Virus record (IMG/VR): IMGVR_UViG_3300024502_000010
Span: 1-64,000 of that record
Strand: one strand, 5' to 3'
Length of the DNA stretch: 64,000 nt
Shown: positions 48,242 through 63,118 of the stretch, one piece after another
Layout of the letters: each line of letters begins with the position of its first letter
How positions within the stretch are numbered: the first letter of the stretch is position 1
The notes under the pieces: model-generated
What the model saw: the letters and a program-made list of their open reading frames with translations, nothing else
What the model was told of the DNA's origin: nothing
Database searches by the model: none
Position numbers and translations under genes: made by a program

Positions 48242-48832
48242 TCAGAAAAGATTGCGACCGAATGAACCACACAAATAAAATGCCATTCCTTTATCCTTAA
48301 GCGTCACACCTGCGAAACGGAGAGGAACATAGCGACCGTTAGTTTTAGATGCTTTGGTGCGAATCTGCAGCAATCCGTTAGGTCCAGTGATTGTATTCAG
48401 TTCGCTTTCAATATCAAATGCACGGCGAATCTGCTCACAAATGAACTCATAATCCTCACGCAGTTCCTGATAGTGTTCGGGATGAGTTTCCTCATTCAGT
48501 ACAACAGAACCTACATAATCGTTCTCACGGGTGAATCCAACATATACAGTTTGCTTCAGTTTCTGTCCAACCTTACTATCATCAAAAGACACAGAATCTT
48601 CAATGATTTCAGATAGACAATGCTTCAACTGTGTGGCAGCAATAGATTCACCAACTGTAAAAGTCTTAATCTCTCCATCCTCCAAATCTTTGAGGTCAGA
48701 AGAGTTAGGAACTCCAAGGACAATTTCTAACAGTTGCCCGCGAGCACCTTTGTTCTTGCCAGGTTTATCAAATGCACTGAAATCAGTTACATTCAGTTTG
48801 GCAGATACCTGCAAAGTGGTAAGTTTGGACAT
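48242..48832 (-). CDS. MutH/Sau3AI-like PD-(D/E)xK endonuclease (196 aa)
   Basis: NKGARGQLLEIVLGVPNSSDLKDLEDGEIKT resembles the MutH KG..G.LLE..LG.......D.....ELKT core; C-terminal LLQIRTKAS and AFYL motifs; flanked by repeat copies 5 and 6. Confidence 0.7.
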   Translation of the reverse strand: MSKLTTLQVSAKLNVTDFSAFDKPGKNKGARGQLLEIVLGVPNSSDLKDLEDGEIKTFTVGESIAATQLKHCLSEIIEDSVSFDDSKVGQKLKQTVYVGFTRENDYVGSVVLNEETHPEHYQELREDYEFICEQIRRAFDIESELNTITGPNGLLQIRTKASKTNGRYVPLRFAGVTLKDKGMAFYLCGSFGRNLF

Positions 48833-48883
48833 TGTGGAATTGCGGTGATACTATAGGTACACTTTAGAGGATCCAAGTTGCTA

Positions 48884-49138
48884 TCAACTTTCTTGTGTTA
48901 CACTTTCCACCAAATCGTTCACATAATCCTCATCATAGAGTCGTGAAATCTCTTCGATTAACTCTTCTGGAAGTGAGCAAGTTTCGCGGAGATTCTCTTC
49001 AATCGTATCGCTTGCAAATTGTACCAAACTGTCGAGGTCCATACCATCAACAATCGACTCAATGTAGAGTGCAAGCAGTTTATCGTATTGGTCTTGAGTA
49101 AGTGTCATTTTGTTTGTGAAGTTAGGGAGGGAAATCAT
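48884..49138 (-). CDS. Early acidic hypothetical protein
   Basis: Y.ESIVDGMDLDSLVQFA; packed in an operon. Confidence 0.6.
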   Translation of the reverse strand: MISLPNFTNKMTLTQDQYDKLLALYIESIVDGMDLDSLVQFASDTIEENLRETCSLPEELIEEISRLYDEDYVNDLVESVTQES

Positions 49139-49377
49139 TTCAAGATGTGGCGATAATCAATGGATTTGATACACCAACCGTAGGCAGTTGTAATCTCTTC
49201 TACTAAATCTTCTTCATCATCTGCCTCCCAGATTTGACCGATTGTTGCTTGAGTGGCATAATCAAACTCCAAGAATCCATCACATTCTGCATCGTGTTCT
49301 GGAGATTGATTCTCGCCACAATACGGACATTCATCATCAAAATCAAAAGCGATTTCAGTAACTTGGAATTGCATCAT
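49135..49377 (-). CDS. Early hypothetical protein with a CxxC..H..C motif
   Basis: QFQVTEIAFDF, CPYCG and DLVEEIT..YGWCIKSIDYR motifs. Confidence 0.65.
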   Translation of the reverse strand: MMQFQVTEIAFDFDDECPYCGENQSPEHDAECDGFLEFDYATQATIGQIWEADDEEDLVEEITTAYGWCIKSIDYRHILK

Positions 49378-49514
49378 TTGCAGTAGTTAGGGTCAATTTG
49401 GCAGAACTGATCTGCTTGGCGTTCTTGATACTCATTCACCGTCGCATAAGCAGGAATTGCAACTTTAAAACCAAGTGCAATAGTAGCAATCAGGAAAGCA
49501 ATTCGCATTACTAA

Positions 49515-49685
49515 TCAGTCAACGACAGAGTAACAGGCAACCCAGGAAGGAATCCCAGAAAGTGATAGCGAACCGTTGCGGGCATCGCAATAGTCTTGGG
49601 CGTCATCTTCAGTGTAGAAAGGTCCAATATACTCGGGAGAATCCAGAGCATCGGATACGAAACGGACGGTGAAAGTGTTGCTCAT
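49515..49685 (-). CDS. Early hypothetical protein
   Basis: MSNTFTVRF...SPEYIGPF; starts at the ATG adjacent to repeat copy 7. Confidence 0.6.
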   Translation of the reverse strand: MSNTFTVRFVSDALDSPEYIGPFYTEDDAQDYCDARNGSLSLSGIPSWVACYSVVD

Positions 49686-49719
49686 ACTATAGGTACACTT
49701 TAGAGGATCCAAGTTAGAA

Positions 49720-49863
49720 TCAACGAAAACTTACATTGACCGCAACAACTTTTGCGTGAGGATTTCGTGCCAGTGCAGTCTCACGGGCATCTTTTGGGTT
49801 GGTTGCTTGCACTTCTTCTTTGAAGACTTTGCCACCAACGTAGAGTTCAACGATGTACTTCAT
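49720..49863 (-). CDS. Small conserved protein (47 aa, not in track)
   Basis: MKYIVELYVGGKVFKEEVQATNPKDARETALARNPHAKVVAVNVSFR. Confidence 0.7.
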   Translation of the reverse strand: MKYIVELYVGGKVFKEEVQATNPKDARETALARNPHAKVVAVNVSFR

Positions 49864-49901
49864 GTGTTTGTTTGTATTTTAGAAAAAATTGAGGATTTCC
49901 C

Positions 49902-49990
49902 TGCAGTGAATGACCTATGACACCGCTGCAGTAGAATTGAAGAAAAAACAGGTTTTTGCTTCAGTGGTGGACTGGGTTCTCAGTGAGACA
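49902..49990. repeat. Duplicated intergenic hairpin element, copy A
   Basis: tgcagtg(a/g)atgacctatgacaccgctgcagtagaattgaagaaaaa is shared with 56087-56176. Confidence 0.85.
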
Positions 49991-50355
49991 CAAGTGAGAA
50001 TCACAGGGTTTGCCACTCTTGTGCCTCTTTCAAGTTAGAGTTAAAGAATTTTTGGAAGATAGAATCGATCACAGGATACCATTCTTCGTTTGCACTAGGA
50101 TACCCACATTCTCGTGCTTGATTGAGAAACTTAAGAATACAACTTTCCTCATTAGGAGTAAAATTAACGCGATTGAAAGTGTAACCGTCAGTCATCAATC
50201 ATCTCCAAAGTTGTTGACAAGAAAATCCTCAAGTTCGCAAAGTTCCACCTCATCTAAGGAGTCAATGTAGTTACGCAAAGTATCTTCTAAGACACCATTA
50301 TTCTTTTTGCAAGTTTCATACAGAAACTCAAAAAGTTGTGTTTTGTTAGTCATAA

Positions 50356-50625
50356 TCAGTTAGCGTAGATGGACATTTGCTTACGGTCACGGATTGAATC
50401 ATCAATCACCTCACCAATCTGTTCGTAAATGTAGTCGGAACCGCCTACATCAGCGAGCACATCTTGAGTGAAAAGAGAAGAAAAATACTTCTCTTGATTG
50501 TCCTCACCATCAAACTCAACGACATCGTGTTGAGTGAATACAAACGCAGCACAGGGAGCGTTCTCACCTTGACTCTCAATCATTTGGTTGATAGAGTCAC
50601 GAAGTTCAGAAAGAGTGCGGTACAT
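50356..50625 (-). CDS. Early hypothetical protein (89 aa)
   Basis: MYRTLSELRDSINQMIESQGENAPCAAFVFT..DV. Confidence 0.65.
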   Translation of the reverse strand: MYRTLSELRDSINQMIESQGENAPCAAFVFTQHDVVEFDGEDNQEKYFSSLFTQDVLADVGGSDYIYEQIGEVIDDSIRDRKQMSIYAN

Positions 50626-51078
50626 AATTAAACAGGGGTAACTTCAACAGAGCGGATAAGATTTGTGCGGTCTTGTGCTAGGTAATCATCAGCGATTTTA
50701 CCACAAGATGAACGAGACTTGATGAACCTTTCTTCATAGTAAGTCTCTGCACTGTTGGGGACTTTATACTCAATCAAGAGTCGATAGTTGTTCATAATCA
50801 GTACAGAAGAGAGAAAGAACCACAGAACTTACGAACCCACTGGAGAGTATCATAATGACTGCGAGGATTAGACATTACCATGCTCTTGTTAGTTACAGGA
50901 TTGAGAGCAATAGCAACATATTTGTGGTCACATTCTTGATACTCAGGGGTGATTTGTTGAATGAACATTTGCATCACCTTACCTTCTTTCCAGTTGGTGA
51001 CATAGTGAAAGACTTGATCCATTTCAGTGGTTGTGCTCATACTATAGGTACACTTTAGAGGATCCAAGTAAGAATCAC

Positions 51079-51333
51079 TCACCACTTTCCTTGTTGAATG
51101 AGAATCTTTTTGATTTCAGTATAAATGAAGTGACGAAGTTTAGAGTCGGTAGTGTTATCAAAAGCATAATAGAGACGATTCAAGTATTCATTCTGTGTCG
51201 CACCTATGTTACCATTACCACCGATGTCATTGAGTGTAGAACCTCCCTTAGATTTGGGTTTTCCGAAGTTGCCTGTAATGTTTCCTTGTGTGCGAAGTTT
51301 GGGGCGAATCTTTGAAAGGTTAGAGTAAGTCAT
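51079..51333 (-). CDS. Early hypothetical protein (84 aa)
   Basis: SKIRPKLRTQG.ITGNFG..K.K.GS.LND motif. Confidence 0.65.
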   Translation of the reverse strand: MTYSNLSKIRPKLRTQGNITGNFGKPKSKGGSTLNDIGGNGNIGATQNEYLNRLYYAFDNTTDSKLRHFIYTEIKKILIQQGKW

Positions 51334-51587
51334 CGTGCTACAATGTCAAGAGTTTCCAACAGCATCATAGAAAGTTCCATCTGGTTCTCATCATCAACCA
51401 CAGGAATGTTTGTCTCTACAAACTCACTAATCAGTTGGGCAAAGAGTTCAGTTGTGCGCTCATCTGCGAATAGAGCAGTGGCAAGTTCGTTCTTGAACCC
51501 ATCACGCAAAAGTTTGAGAGACTTTGTGACAGTCATTTCTTTGATTTGTTCATCATAAGTCATTTCAGTGTCAGGGATTGTGCTCAT
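51330..51587 (-). CDS. Early hypothetical protein (85 aa)
   Basis: Four-base overlaps with the genes on both sides. Confidence 0.65.
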   Translation of the reverse strand: MSTIPDTEMTYDEQIKEMTVTKSLKLLRDGFKNELATALFADERTTELFAQLISEFVETNIPVVDDENQMELSMMLLETLDIVAR

Positions 51588-51808
51588 TCTTCATTTCCAT
51601 CAAAAATCGAATCTTCCCAACCATCAAGGTAAGGTTGTTCATCCTCCTCATAAGGGAACATTTCGTCATACTCTTCGTCAGTCAGAGTAAGATACTGAAC
51701 ATTAGCATTTTTGTGCTCTTCAGCATACACTAACTGATAGTGAGCGAAAGAAGAAGGGTCTGAACTAGCGTATTCTAGCAAACCATCAACAAAACAAAGG
51801 TAGTTCAT
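51584..51808 (-). CDS. Early hypothetical protein (74 aa)
   Basis: MNYLCFVDGLLEYAS...FAHYQLVYAEEH. Confidence 0.65.
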   Translation of the reverse strand: MNYLCFVDGLLEYASSDPSSFAHYQLVYAEEHKNANVQYLTLTDEEYDEMFPYEEDEQPYLDGWEDSIFDGNEE

Positions 51809-51843
51809 TTTGCGTACAGATAGGTTATAAATAATAACACAGT

Positions 51844-52332
51844 ATGCAGGTATTAAAGATGAAAGAACACCCAGAACATAAAGGTTATTTTATCACAGAA
51901 AACGGTGAAGTTTGGTCATACTGGCGCAATCGTGGAAGAGATGGGTGGGGAGTAGTATTGGATAAAGAACCAAAAAAAAGAAGATTTAATAATCATTGCA
52001 AGGGATACTTGACTGTTTGGATTAAAACGGAAGAAGGACAGAAGTTAAAAAAAGTTCATCGTTTGGTCGCAGAAACTTACATTCCAAATCCAAATAATCT
52101 CCCTCAAGTTAATCACATTGATGGCGTAAAAACAAACAACAATGTCAGTAATCTTGAGTGGTGCAGTAATCAAAAAAACACGGAGTTGGCATTAGCAAAA
52201 GTTCATCGGTTAGTAACACCAACTGGAGAAATAGTAGAAGTTTTTAATCTTGGAAAGTTTTGTAGAGAACATAAAATTGATAGGGGAGACCTTTATAAAG
52301 GGAAAAAGTCCAAAGGTTACTATTTGCAATAA
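51844..52332 (+). mobile_element. Free-standing HNH homing endonuclease (NUMOD4-like N-terminus plus HNH)
   Basis: Y.ITENGEVWS, GYLTV, VHRLVAETYIPNPNNLPQVNHIDGVKTNNNVSNLEWCS motifs; TATAAATA late promoter at 51826-51833; antisense to neighbours. Confidence 0.92.
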
Positions 52333-52764
52333 TCACCTTTTGTAAAGATATCCGGACGACCAATCTGCGTTCTCAAACAACCATTCACGGTCCTTAATTA
52401 ACAAGAGATTGTATCGCTCACCCTTTGCAGGACTACGCCACGACGCTGACTTGAAAACGCCTCCATTTTGCTTGTCGATAAAACAGTGAACCGATCTCGA
52501 TCCACCACCATTCACCAGAATGACTTTGTGATACTTTTTGCCAGTCTCAACAGTATAATCAATGTCACACTTGCCAGACTTGAGTTCATCAATCTTGCGC
52601 TGATGATACTCTTGATTATCAGCATCATTCACGAACTTTTGGTGACCGCGAATAGAATACTGACGATAGTTGTCTTTCAGTGCTTCAATCAGCAGCAGAG
52701 TGTTCTTATACACATTCTCTGCAATAGTTTGTTGTGCTTGTGCTTGCATCGTAGGAGTGCTCAT
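52333..52764 (-). CDS. Conserved early hypothetical protein
   Basis: GKKYHKV...SVHCFIDK..G.V.KSASW..PAKG.RYNL motif; start after repeat copy 9. Confidence 0.7.
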   Translation of the reverse strand: MSTPTMQAQAQQTIAENVYKNTLLLIEALKDNYRQYSIRGHQKFVNDADNQEYHQRKIDELKSGKCDIDYTVETGKKYHKVILVNGGGSRSVHCFIDKQNGGVFKSASWRSPAKGERYNLLLIKDREWLFENADWSSGYLYKR

Positions 52765-52792
52765 ACTATAGGTACACTTTCGAGGATCCAAG

Positions 52793-53710
52793 TTACCAAC
52801 TCTTTGCGATTGTGAAGTTGGCATGAGAGAATACCTCACGATCAACTACTTTGTAAGACCCAAACTTGTTATGAATGACATAACCCTCGTGGAAACCTGC
52901 AACATCCCAGAGGAAACATTCAATGTCATCCTCTTCATGAATGAACAGGAACAAATCATCCTTGATAGACTTCACCAACTTCCACAATCTGATGAGGTTG
53001 ATGTCACAATCGCATTTTTCTGCAATTTCATCCTCACGGATGGTGCGTTGCTCTCGGATGCAAGCGTTAATCTCTTTTTTGATTTGTGATGCTTTCTTGT
53101 CGCTCACAAACTCACACAGAGTGCTCATTTGTTTAGCAAAGTTACACACATCCTCCAAATCTTCACGATAAGGATTCAGCGACACAGCAGGTTGCACAAA
53201 CAAACATTTCTTTGTGCTTGCAAACTTGCTAGTGATAGGATGTGCTACCATTTCAGGCAGACGCTCACCAGTGTAGTAAGTATGTGGAGCAACGATAATC
53301 TCTTGACGCACAACTTCAGGAAAACGATAGGTAATCGTGTTGGGCGTGAATGTATCCAACCCTTTACCGAAACCAATCCAATCTCCCTGATACACATTGT
53401 TAGTGCGAGGAAGATAATCCAGACAGAAGATGAGGATTTGTGCTACCCTTGGTTGTCCACCAAAATGAGTAAAGATGTCATCTTCGTTATAGCAAAGGCG
53501 AATCTTTTGCTTGTTAAATGCTGCTTTGGTGCAGACAAAAAACTTACCATTCTCAGGATTAGTGCCCCAAACAATAGCAGGAGCACCATCCATCTTGACG
53601 CTGATAAAACTATCAACCTCAGAGAACCAATCAAGAACAGATAGATTACCCGTCAGGATTTCATCTTCAGGGTGCTCAAGGTGCTTATTTTGCATTGGTT
53701 GCTTACTCAT
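52793..53710 (-). CDS. Conserved protein with a KxDG ligase-type motif (possible nucleotidyltransferase)
   Basis: NKHLEHPED, SVKMDGAPAIVWG..P..GKFFV.TK and HEGYV...K.VDR..FS..NF motifs; exactly fills the interval between repeat copies 9 and 10. Confidence 0.6.
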   Translation of the reverse strand: MSKQPMQNKHLEHPEDEILTGNLSVLDWFSEVDSFISVKMDGAPAIVWGTNPENGKFFVCTKAAFNKQKIRLCYNEDDIFTHFGGQPRVAQILIFCLDYLPRTNNVYQGDWIGFGKGLDTFTPNTITYRFPEVVRQEIIVAPHTYYTGERLPEMVAHPITSKFASTKKCLFVQPAVSLNPYREDLEDVCNFAKQMSTLCEFVSDKKASQIKKEINACIREQRTIREDEIAEKCDCDINLIRLWKLVKSIKDDLFLFIHEEDDIECFLWDVAGFHEGYVIHNKFGSYKVVDREVFSHANFTIAKSW

Positions 53711-53980
53711 ACTATAGGTACACTTTCGAGGATCCAAGTTTCAATCAATCAAACTTGCATCAGTTTAGCAAGACGATTGCGAATATCAAAGAGTTCCATT
53801 TCATCCATATCTACATCATCAAGACCTACGGGAGCAAACGCTTCAAGATCTACAGTGCCATTTTGCATAATGGGAGAATAATATAACTCATCTCCATCTT
53901 CTTGCGACAGAGTATAGACGCAACCGTGACCAGGAACAGTGAGGAAAATCATTGAAGTTTTACGAACAAAGGTACAATAA

Positions 53981-54263: not shown

Positions 54264-54310
54264 AGGGTAAATGCGTCTTACACTATAGGTACACTTTAGA
54301 GGATCCAAGT

Positions 54311-54490
54311 TTAATTCACTGGAAGTTTTGCCATTGACTTACCTTTTTTGTGGTCTGTGATATACTTTCGCGCAGAACTTTCGGTCCTACAAACTTTCTC
54401 AAGTTGCTGACCATTGTGAATGATAAGATACTGATTCCCAAACGGAATTGCAGCATATGTATCCTTGAACATTGTAAATCCTTCTTTCAT
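54311..54490 (-). CDS. Small hypothetical protein (59 aa, not in track)
   Basis: MKEGFTMFKDTYAAIPFGNQYLIIHNGQQLEKVCRTESSARKYITDHKKGKSMAKLPVN. Confidence 0.65.
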   Translation of the reverse strand: MKEGFTMFKDTYAAIPFGNQYLIIHNGQQLEKVCRTESSARKYITDHKKGKSMAKLPVN

Positions 54491-54492
54491 CG

Positions 54493-55356
54493 TTACATAA
54501 ACTTGGTAAGACCAACAGTTTCACTAACTCTCTTTTCAATCAATTTACCATACTCCTCGTGAAGTTCGCATCCAACATAATTCCTTCCCAAAGATTTGGC
54601 AACAGCAGCAGTAGTCCCACTACCCATAAATGGGTCAAGAATAGTGTCACCTTCACGAGAACCAGCAATAATACAAGGTTCAATAAGTTCTGGAGGATAA
54701 ACTGCAAAGTGAGAACCTTTGTATGGTTTAGTTGTTACTTCCCATACACTACGTTTCCGTTTTAATTCCTTGCCATCTACAGTGGGTTCTTTAATCGAAT
54801 CAACATCAAAATAATAGTTCTTGCTCTTAGATAAGAGGAAGATATATTCGTGAGATTTGGTACATCGATCTTTCATACTTTCGGGCATTGGATTTGGTTT
54901 GCTCCAAATAATATCCTGTCGTAGATACCAACCATCTGCACGCAAAGCAAATGCTAGCATCCAAGGAATACCAATCAAATCTTTATCCTTTAGACCCTCA
55001 AGTTTATTTCCTCTTCTAGGATTTCGTATTTGTGGCAAATCTTGGTTGTTAGATGCCACAGATTGCTTAGGTAGTGTCTGACCTTTACCAGAACGATAGT
55101 TGTAATAAGAATCACCAATGTTAACCCACAATGTGCCATCATCTGTAAGAACATCACGCACACCGCGAAACACCTCTACCAGTTGGGAGATAAACTCTTC
55201 AGGCGACTCTTCTAAACCAATTTGATTATCTTCGTTACCGTAATCACGCAGACCGTAGTATGGTGGAGAGGTCACACACATTTGTGCTTTTACACCAGCG
55301 TCTACAAAATGTTTAAGAGTTGAGCGGCAGTCACCATAAAGAATAACATCCTTCAT
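54493..55356 (-). CDS. DNA methyltransferase, N4-C/N6-A beta class (287 aa)
   Basis: VTSPPY catalytic motif near the N-terminus; HFAVYPPEL and ILDPFMGSGTT SAM-binding motif near the C-terminus. Confidence 0.92.
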   Translation of the reverse strand: MKDVILYGDCRSTLKHFVDAGVKAQMCVTSPPYYGLRDYGNEDNQIGLEESPEEFISQLVEVFRGVRDVLTDDGTLWVNIGDSYYNYRSGKGQTLPKQSVASNNQDLPQIRNPRRGNKLEGLKDKDLIGIPWMLAFALRADGWYLRQDIIWSKPNPMPESMKDRCTKSHEYIFLLSKSKNYYFDVDSIKEPTVDGKELKRKRSVWEVTTKPYKGSHFAVYPPELIEPCIIAGSREGDTILDPFMGSGTTAAVAKSLGRNYVGCELHEEYGKLIEKRVSETVGLTKFM

Positions 55357-56048
55357 TCAAGAACCTCTTTTACAAACAATTTATCCATATTTGAGTGATT
55401 TATACGAAAGCAAGTGCCACGATTGCGAACACCCTTACCAGTGCCAACATTATACTGGGTTCTCAGTCGTAAGTCAATAGAAATTACATCATCTTCGATT
55501 GCCTTACGAAACAGATTTTTATCAATAGAAATGTAGACATACGCTTCATTGTAGTGAAAATACTCTATACCATTACGAACTTCAACATCGGCAAATACTT
55601 TAACACAAGATGGAAATTTGTGAGCAAACTGTTTAATAAGTGAATCCCAATCCCACCTAACAATCTCCAGTTCTTCGTGCTTTATGGAAACATATTCATC
55701 ATCAGTATGAATCCAAAATCCTCTGTTGTTTTTGGTTCTTGTCACAGTAGATTGTCCAGACAATTCCCCAATGTGTTTTGTGTGAGGAAATCCAAAAGTT
55801 TCTAGGAACTTTAATTGAGGTATCTGCCATTCACCTTCCTTTGTAAAGAGAGTTTGTTTTCCACCAGCACCTTTCCTTGCTGCTTTCAACTCTTTTCCAT
55901 CAATATCTGGACCAGAGATACAATTCTCAGTCAAACCAAGTTCTTGTTCAAAAGTATGACCAACTCCAGTATCACCTTTGCGATGAGACTTTATGAAACC
56001 TTTTGCTTTAATTCGGTTGTAAGCAGGAACGAACTCAACGAAATCCAT
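55353..56048 (-). CDS. MvaI/BcnI-family restriction endonuclease-like protein (231 aa)
   Basis: RKGDTGVGHTFEQELGLTEN..SGPDI.G.ELKA, TLFTKE and RNRGTCFRI motifs; ATGA overlap with the methyltransferase. Confidence 0.8.
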   Translation of the reverse strand: MDFVEFVPAYNRIKAKGFIKSHRKGDTGVGHTFEQELGLTENCISGPDIDGKELKAARKGAGGKQTLFTKEGEWQIPQLKFLETFGFPHTKHIGELSGQSTVTRTKNNRGFWIHTDDEYVSIKHEELEIVRWDWDSLIKQFAHKFPSCVKVFADVEVRNGIEYFHYNEAYVYISIDKNLFRKAIEDDVISIDLRLRTQYNVGTGKGVRNRGTCFRINHSNMDKLFVKEVLE

Positions 56049-56086
56049 GGTAAAATCTATACTTTAGTAAAAATCAGGAATTTGGT

Positions 56087-56176
56087 TGCAGTGGATGACC
56101 TATGACACCGCTGCAGTAGAATTGAAGAAAAATCAGGTTTTGACCCCTGACTGTGACTGGGTTCTTAGGCGAGACT
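56087..56176. repeat. Duplicated intergenic hairpin element, copy B
   Basis: See copy A at 49902. Confidence 0.85.
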
Positions 56177-57363
56177 CACCGCCGCACTACACTATCAACC
56201 ATCTCACCCTTCTCAAACACAGCATCAACAACTCGCTGGAGTGCTCGCTCTGTAGATACTCCAACTTTGGAATATACAGGCACCACACAGAGACCGAAGA
56301 CCTTTTCTTTGCCGCCAAGGCGAAGAACCCGACCAATAGTTTGGGTCATTTCAATCACATCCATATTGCGAAGAAAGACGACCGCCTCTAGTTCGCTGAC
56401 ATTAATTCCTTCGCTCAAAATAGAGCGATGGAAGCAAACAAACTTCTTGTTAGGGTCACGACCCCAAGAATTGAGCGTGTCAAAGAATACTTCACGATTG
56501 ACTTTCTTACCATCAATAATCGCTCCAGTTTTTGAGGTGATGTAGAGGTAAGAATAACCACGCTGATTTAGTTGGGAAGCACAGTCAGTATGAGACATCA
56601 GGTTGATAAGTTGCTTCGCAGACTTAACACATACCAGGATTTTCTTGCAATCAATATCCTCCAGAGTGTCCATCAGATTGCTACTGTCACATTCAGCAGT
56701 TACCTGCTTTGGTGCAAGTACATCAAACTTCTTCGCTACAATCTTAGGAGCAATAATGTATCCTCCATCAACAAGTTCAGGAGCAGAAACGCGGCAAATA
56801 ATATCTCCATAGACATCACGATCGTTCATTCCAGGTTTAGAAGGAGTGAGCGAAGTCTTCCTGGTAGCAGTGAAGAAGTAGCAGCGGCGTGCATTAGCAG
56901 CAAAGTGCTCAGTTGCAGGGAAAAAGTGACGCTGAACAGAATTATGTGCCTCGTCAAAGTAAATGGTATCCACATCAACTTCTGCCACTTGAAGACGCGA
57001 CAGAGAGTTGTAGGTGGTTACAATCAGGCGATGATTGTCGGCATTAGCATCAACCCAGTTGCGAATCTCTTGAGGGCGAGTAGAAGACTCGTGATGAGTT
57101 TCGCCACTGTGAACATGGAAAACAGCAGCGTTAGTGATAAACTCCAGGAACTCCGAAGACAGTTGCTCTGCCAGAAGAATACGCGGAGCAACAACAACAA
57201 TGGTCTGGGGAGTTTGTGACTGCAACTCACGCAGACAATCATAGATCATCTTCAGAGTCTTGCCACCACCAGTAGGAACAATGACTTGACCTTTATCATG
57301 CTGTTGCATAGCAGCAACTCCGCGTTCTTGGTGAGGACGAAGATTGATCAGATGAGGAATCAT
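56176..57363 (-). CDS. Superfamily 2 helicase (ResIII/DEAD-like, 395 aa)
   Basis: LRPHQ, PTGGGKT (Walker A), DEAH, TAT and ILSEGINV...MTQTIGRVLR motifs. Confidence 0.88.
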   Translation of the reverse strand: MIPHLINLRPHQERGVAAMQQHDKGQVIVPTGGGKTLKMIYDCLRELQSQTPQTIVVVAPRILLAEQLSSEFLEFITNAAVFHVHSGETHHESSTRPQEIRNWVDANADNHRLIVTTYNSLSRLQVAEVDVDTIYFDEAHNSVQRHFFPATEHFAANARRCYFFTATRKTSLTPSKPGMNDRDVYGDIICRVSAPELVDGGYIIAPKIVAKKFDVLAPKQVTAECDSSNLMDTLEDIDCKKILVCVKSAKQLINLMSHTDCASQLNQRGYSYLYITSKTGAIIDGKKVNREVFFDTLNSWGRDPNKKFVCFHRSILSEGINVSELEAVVFLRNMDVIEMTQTIGRVLRLGGKEKVFGLCVVPVYSKVGVSTERALQRVVDAVFEKGEMVDSVVRR

Positions 57364-57609: not shown

Positions 57610-57668
57610 AATGTTGTTTCGTTTGAGTGCTTATACTATAGGGACACTTTAGAGGATCCAAGTAAGTA

Positions 57669-59001: not shown

Positions 59002-59002
59002 T

Positions 59003-59647
59003 TTATCCTAATTCTCCCATTGCTTTTTGCTTACGAAGTTTCTTAGGATTCTTCGTCTTATCTGCAGAGTAGTTATTATCATCCTCATTATCAGGATCTA
59101 CAGCACTACGATGTCTCGTGCGTCTTTCTTCATCATCCATATTTGCACGACTTCTCTTTGCTTCATCTGGAGAATATCTTCTACCACTGTTATACCATTC
59201 CTTACCTACATGACCTCTCTTCTCAGCATCAGCAGAAGCAGATCTCCTCTTATTCTTCTGACGATTTGCCTTGAAGTCCTTCATAGTCATTCCTTCAGCA
59301 ATCATAATACTCTCTCTCCACTCTTCACTCATATTCCCCATAATTGCCGTTGCTGCTTGTTCAGTATCAGCATATCCTTCATCAAGAAGGTGCGAAAGAA
59401 TGATGTCGTATAGGTCATAATCCTCAACATATTGTGAACGATATTTGCCACCTGTTTTTTTATGAGTATCTTCAAGTTCTGCTGCTCTTGCGTCAGCATA
59501 CTTTCTACTCTTTACTGGTTTACCAATCTTCTTCTCTTTCTTTCCATCAGGAGAACCCATTACTTGATATGGCATCTCATCAAGTTGCTGGTTTTCAACA
59601 ACTTCCATATATGCTTCTTGAAGATTGCGAATGTCTTGAGCGTCCAT
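59003..59647 (-). CDS. Charged late protein with the DLYDIILSHLLDEGYA domain (214 aa)
   Basis: MDAQDIRNLQEAYMEV...LDE; ATAAATA late promoter at 59668-59674. Confidence 0.65.
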   Translation of the reverse strand: MDAQDIRNLQEAYMEVVENQQLDEMPYQVMGSPDGKKEKKIGKPVKSRKYADARAAELEDTHKKTGGKYRSQYVEDYDLYDIILSHLLDEGYADTEQAATAIMGNMSEEWRESIMIAEGMTMKDFKANRQKNKRRSASADAEKRGHVGKEWYNSGRRYSPDEAKRSRANMDDEERRTRHRSAVDPDNEDDNNYSADKTKNPKKLRKQKAMGELG

Positions 59648-59905
59648 CTTATGAATAACTTTTTAGTTATTTATTGTTACTCAAACTCAAGGGGTTTATT
59701 TGCAACTCTCATAGGTGGAGTTTGATATTCTGGCATACTAGAAGTTTCAACAAATACTTCTATCTTAGTCTCATCATTCCAATGTCGAATTGCATTAGCG
59801 ATAATGAAGCAGTTGGTAATAAAAATGCTCAAAAACATCAAAAGGCGGATAAGTGCTACCTTATCCGCTTCTTTATCACATTTACTTGCTTTTTCTCCAA
59901 GTGCC

Positions 59906-60169
59906 TTAGCAAGCAATCGCCAGACAGTTCTGTTCTTCTTCATATCTTGATTTTCTTGATTTAACATACTTTAAATGTTTCCAATCTTCTTTATAACAAA
60001 CAACAAGCAATCTTTCATTTGCGTGAATGGGGCAGGCGTGATAGTTTACTTGGTCTTTAGGACGAACAACATACTCAATCGTAACATATTCGTCATCCCT
60101 AAAATAAACCCAACCTTCAACACCTTTTGTCCATTCAACATAATCATTGACTTGTGGTTTGTATGTCAT
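59906..60169 (-). CDS. Conserved hypothetical protein (87 aa)
   Basis: Y.PQVNDYV.W...VEGWVYF.DDEY.TIE motif. Confidence 0.65.
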   Translation of the reverse strand: MTYKPQVNDYVEWTKGVEGWVYFRDDEYVTIEYVVRPKDQVNYHACPIHANERLLVVCYKEDWKHLKYVKSRKSRYEEEQNCLAIAC

Positions 60170-60603
60170 ACAAAGAACGCATCCAATGGAGACTGCTTGA
60201 TAGGCATTGCTGAATAGTTTCGCGTGTCGTTGATATTTACACGAGCACCAACTGTCTTACTATTGATTGGGGCAAAGTATTCTCTGGTCTTGGATTTGTA
60301 GAATCCCCAGATTGTCCTTGTGGGAGCACCATTATTGTAATCAAACTTACGATTGCAATACAACCATATAGCAATAACTCCACGCTTGAACTCTTCGAAC
60401 TCATAATAATAATTTTCGGGTGCTTTATGCGGAAACTCAGCAATCATAGAACTTGTCACGCGACATATACTCAATTTGTTTCTGCAGTTGTGAGATTTCG
60501 TGTTCTTGTTCTGCAATTTTACTTTGCAGTTGTTCAATACGTTCTTGGTACTGTTTCTTCAAATCAAACACCATTTTATTGGTGTGAGTAACGTGGTGAG
60601 TCA

Positions 60604-60846
60604 TCAGGTTGTAAAAGATTCAACTACTGCAGATTCTACATCCTCAGCAAGCGCATAAGTCCTCGCGCTTAACACATTTTCACGAAGAGTAGTATAGTGT
60701 TGCTCATAAAAATTGTCAGAATCTTCTGCAGAAATCAAATCAAAACATTCATTGTCGTTTTCCGCAATCACATTCCAAAGTCCACCGTATTCACTGGACG
60801 GAAAAGGAATGTAGTGGTCAACGATGTAAAGAAACTTTTGTGCCAT
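60604..60846 (-). CDS. Conserved hypothetical protein (80 aa)
   Basis: LYIVDHYIPFPSSEYGGLWNVIA. Confidence 0.7.
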   Translation of the reverse strand: MAQKFLYIVDHYIPFPSSEYGGLWNVIAENDNECFDLISAEDSDNFYEQHYTTLRENVLSARTYALAEDVESAVVESFTT

Positions 60847-61381
60847 TTGTCTTTGTAAATTACCTCTTAAGTTTAAGATTAGTTGTCGTTATTGTCAATG
60901 TCGGAAGCAACTATAAAAGAAACTCCTACAGTCAAAAGAATACCGATTCCCATACCAAGAATAAAAGTCATTAGTAAAACTCAGCGAGATAGTAGTCAAC
61001 AGTTACCTCAAGTTTCGCTGCTTCACGCTCAACTTCTTTCCAGAACTCTTCTGCTACTTTGTCCATTTCTGCTTGTTTAATAAGGTCACGGAGTCGTTTG
61101 GGGATCATTTGGATTTCTCCTTAAGTTTTGCTTCTTCGCGTGAATACATTACCTTTAAGTAATATAGCATAATGGAGGATACAAATGCAACCAGTGCTGC
61201 GTAGATTGCTACACCGAGTACAATACTCATCTGATTTCTATAGAGGGTGGTTTCTTGAGATTCTCTATTGCCTTAGAGCGATAGTAAGCATCATACATTT
61301 TGTCATCACGCTGGATTAGAAAGACATTCCAACCAAGAATAACTGCAAAACCAATCAATCCAACAACAATGTACTTTTTGT

Positions 61382-61789
61382 TCATTTGCTCATTTGAAGA
61401 GTAGGAACAGGCATACCACCTTCGGTGGGAACATAGATGGTCACATTACCTTTGTTAGATCCTTCTTCAAGACCAGTAATGTAAAGATACTGAAGATACT
61501 CACGGTTGTCCTTCAGACTATCACCAATGATTTGGTTTGCCTTAGCAACACCAGTAGCACGGATGATTTCAGCATCAGCAAGTTGTTGAGCACTATCTTT
61601 CTTTGCTTGTGCTTCAAGAACTGCTACCTGACGAGTGTATTCTGCTTTTTGCAACTCTGCTTTACCAGCAAGAGATTGCTGCCACACATTATATTGTGGA
61701 CCACCAATAAAGATGAGACCACCAATCACAACCACACCGACAGCAATAGCAGCAACAGCAGGGTCAATAAATCCGTTTTGTTGTTTCAT
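61382..61789 (-). CDS. Membrane-anchored coiled-coil protein, SPFH/prohibitin C-terminus-like (135 aa)
   Basis: N-terminal hydrophobic helix, A/E/K-rich heptads (IRATGVAKANQIIGDSL) and YL.YLY.....IYVPTE. Confidence 0.65.
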   Translation of the reverse strand: MKQQNGFIDPAVAAIAVGVVVIGGLIFIGGPQYNVWQQSLAGKAELQKAEYTRQVAVLEAQAKKDSAQQLADAEIIRATGVAKANQIIGDSLKDNREYLQYLYITGLEEGSNKGNVTIYVPTEGGMPVPTLQMSK

Positions 61790-61806
61790 AATAATTTACC
61801 TAAGAA

Positions 61807-62220
61807 TTAAACAGCAAGCGCAGCAGAGGGGATTTCAATCACTTCAGGAAGTTTTTGTTCATAACAATTCATATTGTAGCACACCCATTCACCGTTGCGG
61901 AAGACATAGGCATACTCTTCACCATTAGCAGGCAGAAGATACTCACACAAATCAGCATCAAGACGAGGAGGACAATCATCGTTACGATAAGAATAATAGT
62001 TGGGTCCATAAACACCCTTCACTGCACTATCATTCCAGCGGTCATCAGTCCAGCAGCAAGACATATCACCACCATCAATCAAGTCAGCAACTTTCTGACG
62101 AGTGTTGTAATGAGTGTTCAGGATACGACCCAACCATTCAGGATAACCATCCCAGTGGTGATACACAGAGAGAATAGAACCATTCTTAAGTTCAAGACCG
62201 ATTCGTGCTCGGGTGGACAT
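61807..62220 (-). CDS. Conserved early hypothetical protein
   Basis: MSTRARIG...SVYHHWDGYPEWLG..L..HY motif. Confidence 0.75.
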   Translation of the reverse strand: MSTRARIGLELKNGSILSVYHHWDGYPEWLGRILNTHYNTRQKVADLIDGGDMSCCWTDDRWNDSAVKGVYGPNYYSYRNDDCPPRLDADLCEYLLPANGEEYAYVFRNGEWVCYNMNCYEQKLPEVIEIPSAALAV

Positions 62221-62266
62221 TTCAAGTTTGTTGCTTACATTATAGGTACACTTTAGAGGATCCAAG

Positions 62267-63118
62267 TTAGTAAACTGCTATGAGTTCACTTGCTTTTTTC
62301 CTACTGCCGCCTTTTGCAGCAATCGTTCTAGTTACTTGAATTTGATAGATTGTAGCATTTTTGTAGAGTTCTCTTGTAATAGGAACATCGTGATTTGATA
62401 CAATCACTTTGATACCTTTAGATGAAAGAGATTCTGCAAGTTGTGCTAACTGAACTTGTTGGTCAGAAGTAAATCCATCAGTCGCATAACTTGTGAAATT
62501 TGCAGTATTTGATGCAGGAACATACGGTGGGTCAAAGTAGACAACATCACCTGCTTCCAAATCCTCATACAGAGATGAATCTTCAAAAGAAAGTGATGTG
62601 AACCTCACCAATTGTTTGGATAAGAAATACATCCTGAAGTTCATCATTTCCTCTCTGGGAAAGTAAGCACTTTGTATTTCTTTCTCCCCAGTATCCTTAT
62701 TTACAACTTCTCTACCATAAGGAACATTAAACATTCCTTTGCTATTATATCTTGATAGTCCATTAAAACAGTGCTTATTCAAATAAATGAATAACCTTGC
62801 TCTCTCTGTAGTATCTGTTGCTTGATTGAAGTGCTCTCGCAACTCCAAATATACTTCTCTTGTATTATTCTCTGGCGTGAATAGTTCTTCGCAGTATTGA
62901 ATGAAACTATCATCATTTGGATTTACCAAATTCTGATAGATTGCTACCAAATCCTTATTCACATCGTTGAGGATATATTGCTGTGCTGGTGTATTCAAAG
63001 CAACAGCAAGACTACCACCAAAGGGTTCACAATAACGCTTTGGATAACCAATATGGGGAATAAGATGGGGCAGAACTCTTGTTTTATTGCCAGCCCATTT
63101 AAGAAAAGTTTTGTTCAT
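62267..63118 (-). CDS. dam: Dam-like DNA adenine methyltransferase (283 aa)
   Basis: FLKWAG.K, EPFGGS, FNGL.RYN..G.FNVPYG and YFDPPY motifs closely follow the E. coli/T4 Dam family. Confidence 0.9.
   Translation of the reverse strand: MNKTFLKWAGNKTRVLPHLIPHIGYPKRYCEPFGGSLAVALNTPAQQYILNDVNKDLVAIYQNLVNPNDDSFIQYCEELFTPENNTREVYLELREHFNQATDTTERARLFIYLNKHCFNGLSRYNSKGMFNVPYGREVVNKDTGEKEIQSAYFPREEMMNFRMYFLSKQLVRFTSLSFEDSSLYEDLEAGDVVYFDPPYVPASNTANFTSYATDGFTSDQQVQLAQLAESLSSKGIKVIVSNHDVPITRELYKNATIYQIQVTRTIAAKGGSRKKASELIAVY

What the first reader, a model, noticed from the sequence alone, without database searches (positions are those of the whole stretch)
48242..63118. Possible GATC-centred circuit: Dam + MutH-like nuclease + GATC in every repeat copy
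Seen: a Dam-family methylase whose stop touches repeat copy 14, a MutH/Sau3AI-like gene, and an invariant GATC in all 14 copies, near the -35 position. Inference (speculative): methylation state could time early transcription, or transiently hemimethylated repeats could be nicked to stimulate cassette recombination. The pair could also discriminate against unmethylated host or competitor DNA.
Basis: inference. Interest (0 to 1): 0.6.

Follow-up and report, generated by a model that had tools for sequence, protein, structure and literature searches.

The report
Cyanophage Dam–MutH pair and early promoters
All three observed parts are real in this T4-like cyanophage, but only the Dam methylase and the MutH-like GATC nuclease form a conserved pair; the GATC in the 14 repeats sits in a variable part of a repeated early-promoter element and is probably incidental.

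Summary
Observation confirmed. Gene 62267-63118(-) is an E. coli-type Dam. Gene 48242-48832(-) is a remote but clear MutH homologue. A 27-nt core occurs 14 times, only at 44.1-62.3 kb of the 205-kb genome, always on the gene strand and always containing GGATCC.

Interpretation partly supported. Dam and the MutH-like gene are linked across cyanomyoviruses. All 25 phage records with the nuclease also carry Dam: 23 adjacent, one fused into a single ORF (S-8S29), one apart. Another 39 records have Dam alone.

The third part does not hold. The repeat is a PeSL-like cassette junction, most simply an early promoter (-35 TTGGAT, 17 nt, -10 TAGTAT). GATC lies in its -35 box, the part that differs between lineages. 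Of 80 MutH-like-bearing relatives, 23 have a GATC box, 26 have other boxes (GGGCCCC, TACTCACC, GGGGCC, CTGAGCC) and 31 lack the repeat. Cassette boundaries fall at the repeats whichever box is present.

Dam has its own, different promoter. The repeats hold only 14 of the genome's 418 GATC sites.

A second MutH-fold nuclease (MvaI/BcnI family, 55353-56048) overlaps its own methylase. It is a separate type II restriction-modification cassette inserted only in this lineage.

The most likely role of Dam plus MutH-like is a restriction-modification-like module that nicks unmethylated GATC; this is inferred, not shown.

The parts
62267..63118 (-). Dam: D12-class N6-adenine DNA methyltransferase, E. 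coli Dam type, predicted GATC-specific
   Evidence: Pfam PF02086 6.3e-60. TIGR00571 257.6 bits, above cut-off. PDB E. coli Dam 8e-67 over the full length, with DPPY and FLKWAG.K / GLsRYN / NVPyGR conserved. 69% identical to S-CAM7 Dmt.
63125..63158 (-). Dam's own promoter and hairpin: GGGGGGTTGACAACCCTC, a T-run, then TATACT, with the ATG 6 nt after the -10. It differs from the 14-copy repeat.
   Evidence: Consensus scan: TTGACA, 16 nt, TATACT, 11 of 12 matches, plus a terminator-like stem. Sequence read.
48242..48832 (-). MutH-like endonuclease (P0001, 196 aa), predicted methylation-sensitive GATC nickase; expressed behind repeat copy 6
   Evidence: Family profile against PDB: MutH 1.3e-16. 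26 of 54 family members hit Pfam MutH. NCBIfam MutH 6e-9, below cut-off. AlphaFold pLDDT 96.5; top Foldseek hits 2AOR/2AOQ/2AZO MutH, probability 1.0. Invariant K28 G29 D49 K56 K91; near-invariant E36 R158 F185 Y186.
62241..62267 (-). Repeat copy 14, first in transcription order; abuts the Dam stop codon
58721..58747 (-). Repeat copy 13
57637..57663 (-). Repeat copy 12 (1 mismatch, GTGTCCC)
54284..54310 (-). Repeat copy 11
53713..53739 (-). Repeat copy 10 (1 mismatch, CTCG); upstream of the DUF6267 gene
52767..52793 (-). Repeat copy 9 (1 mismatch, CTCG)
51043..51069 (-). Repeat copy 8
49688..49714 (-). Repeat copy 7
48852..48878 (-). Repeat copy 6; the MutH-like ATG lies 20 nt after its TATA
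48210..48236 (-). Repeat copy 5
47768..47794 (-). Repeat copy 4
47244..47270 (-). Repeat copy 3
47006..47032 (-). Repeat copy 2; upstream of the Kyano_Gp96 gene
44122..44148 (-). Repeat copy 1, last in transcription order
55353..56048 (-). Second MutH-fold nuclease: MvaI/BcnI-family type II restriction endonuclease (P0002, 231 aa). Not a partner of Dam.
   Evidence: Pfam PF15515 6.7e-39. PDB R.MvaI 6.5e-15, R.BcnI 4e-9. PADLOC REase_II. Only one other record among 50,697 phage records.
54493..55356 (-). Cognate N4/N6 DNA methyltransferase of the MvaI/BcnI-like nuclease; its start overlaps the nuclease stop by 4 nt
   Evidence: Pfam PF01555 4.1e-57. PADLOC MTase_II 1.5e-108. In relatives L147, L202 and L156 homology jumps from 56058 straight to 54490-54497, so this 1.56-kb cassette is missing there.
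56176..57363 (-). DEAD/ResIII helicase. It is the gene next to the Dam-MutH-like pair in S-RIM8-type phages.
   Evidence: Pfam; S-RIM8 annotation.
56060..56141 (-). 82-nt element, second copy at 49875-49956 (87% identical), with a terminator-like hairpin; marks the upstream edge of the restriction-modification insertion
   Evidence: (family D4)

Best explanation
The 44-63 kb stretch is the early, hyperplastic cassette region of a T4-like cyanophage (Kyanoviridae; the closest isolate by Dam and MutH-like identity is S-CAM7). It holds three separate things.

(1) A junction element repeated 14 times fills the roughly 40 nt between the stop codon of one cassette and the start of the next. On the gene strand it reads [box TTGGATCCTCT]-AAAGTG-N6-TAGTAT-GAGCAC. 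Most simply it is a host-polymerase early promoter (-35 TTGGAT, 17 nt, -10 TAGTAT). It also serves as the homology at which cassettes are exchanged, like the PeSL elements of other T4-type phages. The right half is shared by many cyanomyoviruses. The 11-13-nt box is nearly invariant within a genome and differs between genomes. GATC is simply what two central box positions (GG-AT-CC) spell in this lineage.

(2) Dam and the MutH-like nuclease are a conserved two-gene module: a GATC methylase that protects the phage's own DNA, and a nickase predicted to be methylation-sensitive that attacks GATC-unmethylated DNA. It would work like a restriction-modification pair against co-infecting phages or Dam-negative host chromosomes. 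In most relatives the two genes are adjacent; here 13.4 kb of cassettes separate them.

(3) The MvaI/BcnI-like nuclease with its overlapping methylase is an independent type II restriction-modification cassette, inserted only in this lineage.

Shown: gene identities, linkage statistics, repeat anatomy and its distribution. Inferred: promoter activity, GATC specificity of both proteins, and the biological target.
For: Dam identity.

MutH homology, fold and catalytic residues (D49/E54/K56/K91, LQIR158xK160, F185-Y186 aligned with MutH D70/E77/K79/K116, R184/K186, Y212).

Linkage: 25 of 25 nuclease-bearing phage records have Dam (23 about 80 nt apart, one fused, one apart); 39 further records have Dam only. 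The S-8S29 fusion ORF of 492 aa has no internal stop. In metagenomic relatives the order can be MutH-like then Dam with gaps of 30-92 nt.

Box variability.

The repeat abuts the upstream stop codon and contains or precedes the start codon.

Homology-block ends: 80 of 240 lie within 15 nt of a repeat, against 5.9% expected. The share is 31% for non-GATC relatives and 35% for GATC relatives.

Restriction-modification cassette absent from relatives. Dam has a different promoter. mutH is absent from all cyanobacteria surveyed (PMC5101192), so the gene is not a host repair gene. PeSL definition: PMC2839356 and PMC4122927.
Against: - There are no transcription start or methylation data. The RNA-library contigs simply break at the repeats.
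- TTGGAT/TAGTAT is too weak for the consensus scan to call it a promoter.
- In 7 of 14 copies here (220 of 233 ATG-bearing copies across relatives) an in-frame ATG overlaps the putative -10. A transcript started 7 nt further on would lack it. A frequent second in-frame ATG 15-24 nt downstream softens this but does not settle it.
- A D12 methylase is present in 268 of 301 sampled cyanobacterial genomes. Many hosts may therefore already methylate GATC, which weakens host-DNA attack as the role.
- E. coli MutH needs MutL to be active; whether this shorter protein is self-active is unknown.
- Within GATC-type boxes the flanks vary (TTGGATCC, AAGGATCC, TAGGATCG, TATGATCG) while GATC stays. Wherever the contig was long enough to tell, except one 15%-complete fragment, GATC-box phages had Dam or MutH-like. 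A lineage-specific use of the site is therefore not excluded.
Confidence: 0.6

Rival explanations
1. Reader's circuit, version A. Dam methylation of the GATC in the -35 box sets the activity of all 14 early promoters. Fully methylated parental DNA and hemimethylated replicated DNA would then differ, which would time early transcription.
For: GATC overlaps the 3' half of the putative -35 in all 14 copies. The phage encodes a Dam with its own promoter at the head of the array. GATC is retained in all GATC-type box variants while the flanks vary. Dam-sensitive promoters with GATC in -35 or -10 are known in E. coli and its transposons (my own knowledge).
Against: The central AT of the box is replaced by GG, GC, GT or unrelated sequence in sister lineages that keep Dam and MutH-like. 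Dam+/MutH+ phages S-CAM7 and S-RIM8 have no GATC in their early repeats. GATC is no more conserved than the other 23 core positions. There are no expression data.
Confidence: 0.1
2. Reader's circuit, version B. The MutH-like nuclease nicks transiently hemimethylated GATC in the repeats and so stimulates recombination between cassettes.
For: Repeats coincide with cassette boundaries. The nuclease is predicted to nick at GATC. 14 of the 35 GATC sites in 44-64 kb lie in repeats.
Against: Block boundaries fall at repeats just as often in relatives whose boxes lack GATC (29 of 95 against 51 of 145). Only 14 of 418 genomic GATC sites are in repeats. PeSL shuffling in other T4-type phages needs no such nuclease (PMC2839356). 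SynMITS9220M01 and S-SM2 have the repeat family without the nuclease.
Confidence: 0.05
3. Dam plus MutH-like serve the phage's own DNA metabolism rather than self/non-self discrimination. This could be methyl-directed strand discrimination for mismatch correction, or nicks that prime recombination-dependent replication.
For: The catalytic and methyl-sensing residues of true MutH are kept. Hosts have MutS and often MutL but no MutH (PMC5101192). Many cyanobacteria carry a D12 methylase, which makes host DNA a poor target. T4-type replication depends on recombination (established knowledge).
Against: The genetics look like restriction-modification: the nuclease is never found without the methylase, the two are tightly adjacent in either order, and there is a fusion. 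The protein scores far below the MutH equivalog cut-offs (35 against 243 bits). Activation by a cyanobacterial MutL is undocumented.
Confidence: 0.2
4. The 14-copy element is not a promoter. It would be an RNA-level intercistronic element (translation start or processing site, for instance a RegA-type operator) on long early transcripts.
For: The element fills the whole gap between a stop codon and a start codon. 220 of 233 ATG-bearing copies have that ATG in frame with the downstream ORF. GenBank annotators of S-SM2 and SynMITS9220M01 use it as the start codon. The consensus scan does not call it a promoter.
Against: The distance from the element to the start codon varies from 3 to 28 nt. A second in-frame ATG 15-24 nt downstream is strongly enriched, which fits a transcript start just after TAGTAT. 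I saw no consistent RNA pairing across box types (inspection only). No Rfam family matches. The -35/17/-10 geometry holds across all box types.
Confidence: 0.15

Closest known systems
E. coli Dam / T4 Dam / M.DpnIIA (D12-class GATC N6-adenine methyltransferases)
   Same: Full-length homology (8e-67 to E. coli Dam), the DPPY motif, conserved residues in the target-recognition loop, and scores above the TIGR00571 cut-off.
   Different: It is phage-borne. Its closest cellular relatives are gammaproteobacterial (42-45% identity), not cyanobacterial. In cyanophages it is linked to a MutH-like nuclease.
MutH (methyl-directed mismatch-repair endonuclease) and the Sau3AI N-terminal domain
   Same: Same fold, the same D-x(n)-E-x-K plus Lys active site, the LQIRxK DNA-reading loop, and the Phe-Tyr pair that holds the MutH methyl sensor Tyr212.
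   Different: It is 196 aa against about 229 aa and falls below every curated family cut-off. It is encoded by a phage whose hosts have no MutH pathway. It is genetically tied to the methylase (adjacent or fused), which chromosomal mutH is not (the last point is my own knowledge).
Type II GATC restriction-modification systems (DpnII/MboI with Dam-like methylases; Sau3AI with an m5C methylase)
   Same: A methylase and a nuclease predicted to share the GATC site. The nuclease never occurs without the methylase, and the methylase often occurs alone.
   Different: The combination is new: a Dam-type m6A methylase with a MutH-type nuclease that is probably a nickase. It is carried by lytic phages, not by bacteria. 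In this genome the two genes are 13.4 kb apart.
PeSLs, the promoter-early stem-loop cassettes of T4-type phages (Arbiol 2010, Comeau 2014)
   Same: A repeated intergenic motif in a hyperplastic region, one orientation, in front of small ORFan cassettes, reaching as far as the start codon. Differences between related phages begin and end at the motif.
   Different: It has no stem-loop and no Shine-Dalgarno sequence. The -35 is weak and lineage-specific. The start codon often overlaps the -10. It is longer and more uniform within a genome (27 nt, at most 1 mismatch). PeSLs have not been described in cyanophages, and the S-PM2 study found no comparable density.
MvaI / BcnI type IIP restriction-modification systems
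   Same: Pfam family membership at 134.7 bits; an overlapping methylase gene of the N4/N6 class.
   Different: It is phage-encoded and rare there (2 of 50,697 phage records, counting this lineage's relative). The recognition site is not determined: CCWGG observed/expected 0.71, CCSGG 1.15.

Membership tests
Dam (GATC-specific D12-class N6-adenine methyltransferase) | D12-class methyltransferase domain above the curated thresholds | tested here: met
   PF02086 203.5 bits against 22. TIGR00571 257.6 against 114.85. The E. coli equivalog NF008152 scores 258 against 441, so it is a family member, not an ortholog.
Dam (GATC-specific D12-class N6-adenine methyltransferase) | Catalytic DPPY motif and the residues that read GATC in E. 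coli Dam (K9, L122, R124, P134) | tested here: met
   The alignment to 4GOL/2G1P shows FDPPYVP, FLKWAGNK, NGLSRYN and NVPYGR. Which residues read GATC comes from my own knowledge of the E. coli Dam-DNA structure.
Dam (GATC-specific D12-class N6-adenine methyltransferase) | m6A actually placed at GATC | not testable with these tools
   Needs SMRT or Nanopore methylome data, or DpnI/MboI digestion of virion DNA.
MutH | Sequence-family membership at curated cut-offs | tested here: not met
   No Pfam hit for P0001. NCBIfam MutH 35.3 bits against 243, and 23.8 against 229.9. Therefore it is MutH-like, not MutH.
MutH | Full-length homology and the MutH fold | tested here: met
   Family profile against E. 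coli and H. influenzae MutH: 1.3e-16 and 1e-15, covering profile positions 22-211 of 214. Foldseek top five hits are all MutH, probability 1.0, TM-score 0.51-0.67. Model pLDDT 96.5.
MutH | Active site D70/E77/K79 plus K116, the R184/K186 loop and the Tyr212 methyl sensor | tested here: met
   D49, K56 and K91 are invariant; E36, R158, F185 and Y186 are at least 90% conserved in 54 homologues. They align with the MutH motifs. The roles of the residues come from my own knowledge (Ban and Yang 1998; Lee 2005; Friedhoff 2003).
MutH | Works with MutS/MutL in methyl-directed mismatch repair | not testable with these tools
   The hosts have no MutH pathway (PMC5101192). No interaction test was run.
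Type II restriction-modification system (Dam + MutH-like as a pair) | Methylase and nuclease genes linked; the nuclease depends on the methylase | tested here: met
   25 of 25 nuclease-bearing phage records have Dam: 23 adjacent, one fused, one (S-CAM7) 32 kb apart. 39 records have Dam only. In this genome the genes are 13.4 kb apart.
Type II restriction-modification system (Dam + MutH-like as a pair) | Same recognition site; cleavage blocked by the cognate methylation | not testable with these tools
   Inferred from homology only.
PeSL (promoter-early stem-loop cassette) | Repeated, oriented intergenic motif in front of small ORFs in a hyperplastic region | tested here: met
   14 copies in 18 kb, one strand, each between a stop and a start codon.
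PeSL (promoter-early stem-loop cassette) | Strong sigma-70-like -35/-10 | tested here: inconclusive
   TTGGAT, 17 nt, TAGTAT matches 3 of 6 and 4 of 6 consensus positions and is not called by the consensus scan. The geometry is conserved across box types. No transcription start data.
PeSL (promoter-early stem-loop cassette) | Stem-loop terminator within the motif | tested here: not met
   The 37-nt element contains no hairpin, and no terminator-like site coincides with a copy. S-CAM7 and S-RIM8 relatives do have hairpins.
PeSL (promoter-early stem-loop cassette) | Insertions, deletions and replacements between related phages begin and end at the motif | tested here: met
   80 of 240 homology-block ends lie within 15 nt of a copy, against 5.9% expected (binomial p = 2e-38; the events are not independent). 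A cassette is transposed in L136 relative to this genome.
MvaI/BcnI restriction-modification system | MvaI_BcnI nuclease domain plus an adjacent N4/N6 methyltransferase | tested here: met
   PF15515 134.7 bits against 25; PF01555 194.1 against 26.7; 4-nt gene overlap at 55353-55356.

The most novel reading that the evidence does not exclude
In the sub-lineages whose box spells GATC, the phage's own Dam would write an m6A mark into the -35 box of every early promoter. Parental (fully methylated), freshly replicated (hemimethylated) and foreign (unmethylated) copies would then be transcribed differently, or nicked by the MutH-like enzyme. That would be an epigenetic early-gene switch built from a restriction-modification-like pair. 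This is not excluded. GATC is retained in every GATC-type box variant while its flanks vary, and every GATC-box contig long enough to judge carried Dam or MutH-like, except one fragment that is only 15% complete.
Probability: 0.07. Interest if true: 0.8.

Novelty: new variant of a known kind. Interest (0 to 1): 0.45.

Why it matters
Dam-type methylases are among the commonest accessory genes of marine and freshwater cyanomyoviruses and are usually read as passive anti-restriction. A MutH-type GATC nuclease travels only with Dam: next to it, and once fused to it. This suggests that part of these phages carry an active, methylation-guided nuclease system whose target (competing phages, Dam-negative hosts, or the phage's own replication forks) can now be tested directly. 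My paper searches found no description of this pair; it appears only as scattered database labels.

The repeat analysis also extends PeSL-type modular shuffling to cyanophages. Here it takes an unusual form: no stem-loop, the start codon built into the repeat, and a small set of discrete -35 box types shared across lineages. That may help explain how the ORFan-rich early regions of these abundant viruses are reshuffled.

For the scan itself, the result shows that an invariant short site inside an invariant repeat is not evidence that the site is functional.

Tried and rejected
1. T7/SP6-like promoter reading. CCTATAG resembles ..CACTATAG, which would start transcripts at the G and give near-leaderless mRNAs. 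I dropped it: no T7-like polymerase is found in the 205-kb record (the record is about 78% complete and the control genomes did not ring either, so this is weak). Relatives vary the TATA (CCTAGTAGT, GCAGTAGT) while TAGTAT stays fixed.

2. Transcript ends from metatranscriptomes. 24 riverine RNA runs hold the region, but they are kept as contigs. These break exactly at the repeats because of the shared 31-mers. The 'loose end' at 47275 is the copy-14 contig aligning to the repeat. No transcription start information resulted.

3. GATC depletion as a signal. GATC is at 0.51 of expectation genome-wide and 0.26 in 42.6-80 kb. Every 4-nt palindrome is more depleted in that region as well (AGCT 0.06, CCGG 0.15), so the depletion is not GATC-specific.

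4. Reverse association (GATC boxes only in Dam+ phages). Contigs are too fragmentary to test it. Five long non-GATC contigs (8-26% complete) and five GATC-type contigs (5-15% complete) gave mostly blanks.

5. Host methylation. A D12 methylase is present in 268 of 301 genomes of the cyanobacterial class sampled, but no genus labels were given, so the actual hosts cannot be picked out.

6. Distant MutH-like proteins (27-34% identity) on three metagenome contigs have no Dam next to them in the short context available.

7. The search for related loci with the 54-sequence alignment failed for lack of a conserved stretch; the single protein was used instead.

8. Doron et al. 2016 (Syn9 transcription start map, PMC5029184) is not held.

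9. Rfam found nothing in 42-64 kb.

10. No complex prediction was run. Only genetic code 11 was used. Read laying was given 6,000 bases.

Full report
WHAT THE WINDOW IS. The window is the first 64 kb of a single 204,829-bp viral contig (36.7% G+C; CheckV completeness about 78%). Patches match Synechococcus myoviruses. The best protein matches are to Kyanoviridae, and S-CAM7 (Mazuvirus) is the closest isolate by Dam and MutH-like identity. Near-identical contigs occur in IMG/VR, and the region is held in 24 riverine metatranscriptome libraries. Bases 1-42 kb carry giant structural ORFs on the minus strand. From about 63 kb down to 43 kb lies a run of some 45 small minus-strand ORFs, typical of the early, hyperplastic region of a T4-type phage.

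The 27-nt core occurs 14 times with at most 1 mismatch, where 0 are expected. It occurs nowhere else in the genome even at 5 mismatches, and always in the gene orientation. Every copy contains GGATCC and hence GATC. The three substitutions seen in the 14 cores fall outside GATC, but that is expected by chance 62% of the time. GATC is therefore no more constrained than the other 23 positions.

Gene 62267-63118(-) is an E. coli-type Dam: Pfam D12 class, TIGR00571 above cut-off, 8e-67 to E. coli Dam structures with DPPY and the recognition-loop residues. Its TAA stop overlaps the first base of copy 14. This is not special: in all copies the preceding gene's stop lies within about 9 nt upstream of the core.

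On its own it hits no Pfam family, only an unannotated PHROG and the NCBIfam MutH models far below cut-off. A profile of 54 diverse homologues hits MutH structures at 1.3e-16 over the full length, Sau3AI at 3e-5 and BcnI at 4e-4. 26 of the 54 members hit Pfam MutH. An AlphaFold model with pLDDT 96.5 has the MutH-DNA complexes as its best PDB matches. The invariant or near-invariant residues (K28, G29, E36, D49, K56, K91, R158, F185, Y186) align with the MutH motifs that hold the active site, the LQIRxK DNA-reading loop and the Tyr212 methyl sensor (the roles are from my own knowledge). It is a MutH-like nuclease, not an orthologue of MutH.

Gene 55353-56048(-) belongs to the MvaI/BcnI family (Pfam 6.7e-39; R.MvaI 6.5e-15). 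Its stop overlaps the start of an N4/N6 methyltransferase at 54493-55356(-). This is an ordinary type II restriction-modification pair with its own methylase, unrelated to Dam. In relatives L147, L202 and L156 the homology jumps from 56058 straight to 54490-54497. The 1.56-kb cassette is therefore a clean insertion in this lineage, placed just after an 82-nt element that has a second copy at 49875-49956. Only one other record in 50,697 phage records has this nuclease.

DAM AND THE MutH-LIKE GENE ARE TRULY LINKED. tblastn finds the MutH-like gene in 25 phage records, all Synechococcus myoviruses.
- In 23 of them it starts about 80 nt after the Dam stop on the same strand. Compare the coordinates: S-RIM8, KBS-M-1A, S-IOM18, S-RS29, QB2, S-M1, WH25-B, S-H25.
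- In S-CAM7 the genes are 32 kb apart.
- In S-8S29 they form one uninterrupted 492-aa ORF: Dam domain at residues 8-254, a linker, then the MutH-like half.
- The same Dam (E below 1e-60) is in 64 cyanophage records, so 39 have Dam alone and none has the nuclease alone.
- In metagenomic relatives the order can be reversed (MutH-like then Dam, gaps of 30-92 nt), or the two can be separated by 1-5 kb of cassettes.

A nuclease that is never found without the methylase, adjacency in either order, and a fusion are the genetic signature of a restriction-modification-like dependency. mutH is absent from all cyanobacteria surveyed (PMC5101192). The closest cellular relatives of this Dam are gammaproteobacterial. 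The pair is therefore not a borrowed host repair pathway.

THE REPEAT AND WHERE GATC SITS IN IT. On the gene strand each copy reads: stop codon, about 6 nt, ACTTGGATCCTCT AAAGTG TACCTA TAGTAT GAGCAC. Scanning IMG/VR with the right half, and then with the MutH-like protein, brought in many related phages.

The conserved part across phages is AAAGTG-N6-TAGTAT(G/A)A(G/A)CAC. The 11-13 nt to its left are nearly invariant within a genome but fall into discrete types between genomes: (T/A)(T/A)(G/T)GATC(C/G)TC, CTGGGCCCCTG, TGGGGCCTTC, CTGGGTCCTTC, CTGAGCC(A/C)CTT, TACTCACCTC and GGGGGGACGC. Right-aligned, most read (T/C)TGG-nn-CC, and GATC is produced when nn = AT.

With TAGTAT as -10, the box occupies -37 to -25. 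TTGGAT sits at -35 to -30 with a 17-nt spacer, and GATC at about -32 to -29. The geometry is that of a host sigma-70-type early promoter, which is what cyanomyoviruses are thought to use (PMC2984593). The match is weak, however, and the consensus scan does not call it.

A PUZZLE AND A PARTIAL ANSWER. In 7 of the 14 copies an ATG overlaps the -10 (TAGT-ATG), and all 7 are in frame with the downstream ORF. Across relatives, 220 of 233 such ATGs are in frame with an ORF of at least 40 codons. GenBank annotators use this ATG as the start codon. A transcript starting 7 nt after TAGTAT would lack it.

However, 75 of 229 such ORFs have a second in-frame ATG exactly 15 nt further on, and many more at 18-24 nt. 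Only 19 ATGs in that stretch are out of frame, against 154 in frame. That is the same distance at which copies without the first ATG have their start codon (mode 18).

The simplest reading is two start codons. The downstream ATG serves transcripts from the element's own promoter. The ATG inside the -10 serves read-through transcripts from upstream copies, since there are no terminators between cassettes, and it is kept in frame so that it does no harm. An RNA-level role for the element is kept as a rival. A T7-like promoter reading was considered and dropped.

THE ELEMENT BEHAVES LIKE A PeSL. [quoted passage not shown] Here, in blastn comparisons with 12 relatives, 80 of 240 homology-block ends lie within 15 nt of a copy, against 5.9% expected. 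Cassettes are transposed between genomes: window 49374-49722 lies downstream of the MutH-like gene in L136. Unlike PeSLs, the element has no stem-loop and no Shine-Dalgarno sequence. The separation of Dam from the MutH-like gene in this genome (13.4 kb, with copy 14 right after Dam and copy 6 right before the nuclease) looks like a product of such shuffling.

TESTING THE THREE-PART CIRCUIT.
- Of 80 IMG/VR loci that encode the MutH-like protein (76-100% identity), 23 have GATC-type boxes, 26 have the repeat with a GATC-free box, and 31 have no such repeat; these carry S-RIM8-like hairpin promoters.
- Lineages with 88-92% identical nucleases carry entirely different boxes.
- S-CAM7 and S-RIM8 (Dam+, MutH-like+) have GATC-free early repeats.
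- The complete isolates SynMITS9220M01 and S-SM2 have the repeat family (boxes TTACTCACCTCT and GGGGGGTCGC) but no D12 methylase and no MutH-like gene.
- Block ends fall at repeats as often in non-GATC relatives (29 of 95) as in GATC relatives (51 of 145).
- Dam is not behind the repeat. It has a near-consensus TTGACA, 16 nt, TATACT promoter embedded in a hairpin, with its ATG 6 nt after the -10.
- Only 14 of the genome's 418 GATC sites are in repeats.
- The stronger GATC depletion of the early region (observed/expected 0.26 against 0.58) is shared by all 4-nt palindromes.

The Dam-MutH-like module and the repeat family are therefore independent. GATC in the repeat is best explained by concerted evolution of a variable box.

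WHAT REMAINS OPEN. Within GATC-type boxes the flanks vary while GATC stays. Wherever a GATC-box contig was long enough to judge, it carried Dam or MutH-like. The one exception is a 31.6-kb fragment, only 15% complete. Because the phage has Dam, these 14 promoters will be methylated in the -35 box whatever the origin of the site, so a lineage-specific effect on transcription cannot be excluded (about 0.1).

The biological target of the nuclease is also open. A D12 methylase is present in 268 of 301 sampled cyanobacterial genomes, and most genomes without it are small. Many hosts may therefore be protected, which favours competing phages or under-methylated replicating DNA as targets, or a role in the phage's own recombination or repair (about 0.2).

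VERDICT. The parts are real and the sequence observation is accurate. The proposed circuit reduces to a conserved two-gene Dam plus MutH-like module, a new variant of restriction-modification logic carried by cyanophages and apparently undescribed in the literature searched. Alongside it sit an independent PeSL-like early-promoter repeat and an unrelated type II restriction-modification insertion. Interest is moderate.

Noticed in passing
Phage record OQ504979.1 71201-72679 (locus L304:702-2180): In Synechococcus phage S-8S29, Dam and the MutH-like nuclease form one uninterrupted 492-aa ORF, a natural methylase-nuclease fusion. It is annotated only as 'DNA adenine methylase'.
   Followed up: yes
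window 54493-56048 (-): A complete MvaI/BcnI-type restriction-modification cassette (nuclease plus overlapping N4/N6 methylase) is inserted in this lineage only. It is absent at exactly this point in relatives L147, L202 and L156. The recognition site is undetermined.
   Followed up: partly
window 49875-49956 and 56060-56141: A pair of 82-nt direct repeats (87% identical) with a CTGCAG...CTGCAG inverted repeat and a terminator-like hairpin. Relatives also have it. The second copy borders the restriction-modification insertion. No Rfam match.
   Followed up: partly
all 14 repeat copies, and 338 distinct copies in related loci: An ATG overlapping the putative -10 (TAGT-ATG) is in frame with the downstream ORF in 220 of 233 cases. 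A second in-frame ATG is strongly enriched exactly 15 nt later. This suggests dual start codons, or that the element is not a simple promoter.
   Followed up: partly
related loci L129-L208, L031-L126, L211-L223: The 11-13-nt box upstream of AAAGTG falls into a few discrete types that do not follow the phylogeny of neighbouring genes. Nucleases 88-92% identical sit behind GATC, GGGCCC or TACTCACC boxes. Possible causes are concerted evolution or a co-varying phage factor; this was not resolved.
   Followed up: partly
window 63125-63158 (-): Dam has a different promoter: TTGACA inside the loop of a G/C hairpin, a T-run, then TATACT, with the ATG 6 nt later. This implies a leaderless mRNA. It is the same architecture as the early repeats of S-RIM8-type marine phages.
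   Followed up: partly
genome 42.6-80 kb against the rest: Every 4-nt palindrome is more depleted in the early region than elsewhere (AGCT observed/expected 0.06, CCGG 0.15, GGCC 0.15, GATC 0.26). No GATC at all lies between genome positions 67252 and 76426. Genome-wide, GGTACC is 0 against 19 expected and GGCC is 23 against 86.
   Followed up: partly
window 51844-52332 (+) and 44913-45926 (+): HNH and GIY-YIG (SegE-like) homing-endonuclease-type genes lie on the opposite strand among the minus-strand cassettes.
   Followed up: no
window 26030-38110, 16847-24418, 7040-12307, 2-4078 (all -): Very large ORFs (4026, 2523, 1755 and more than 1359 aa), presumably virion or fibre proteins. The 10-12 kb stretch inside the 1755-aa ORF has a distinctly higher G+C content (0.465).
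   Followed up: no
Genome-contig loci L224-L303: The closest cellular relatives of the phage Dam are gammaproteobacteria (Rickettsiella, Aquirickettsiella, Coxiellaceae; 42-45% identity), not Synechococcus. MutH is likewise mainly a gammaproteobacterial protein (my own knowledge).
   Followed up: no
proteins P0241 and P0266 (distant MutH-like homologues): MutH-like domains also occur fused to DUF6996/DUF6997 (517 aa) and to ankyrin repeats (449 aa) in metagenomic proteins.
   Followed up: no
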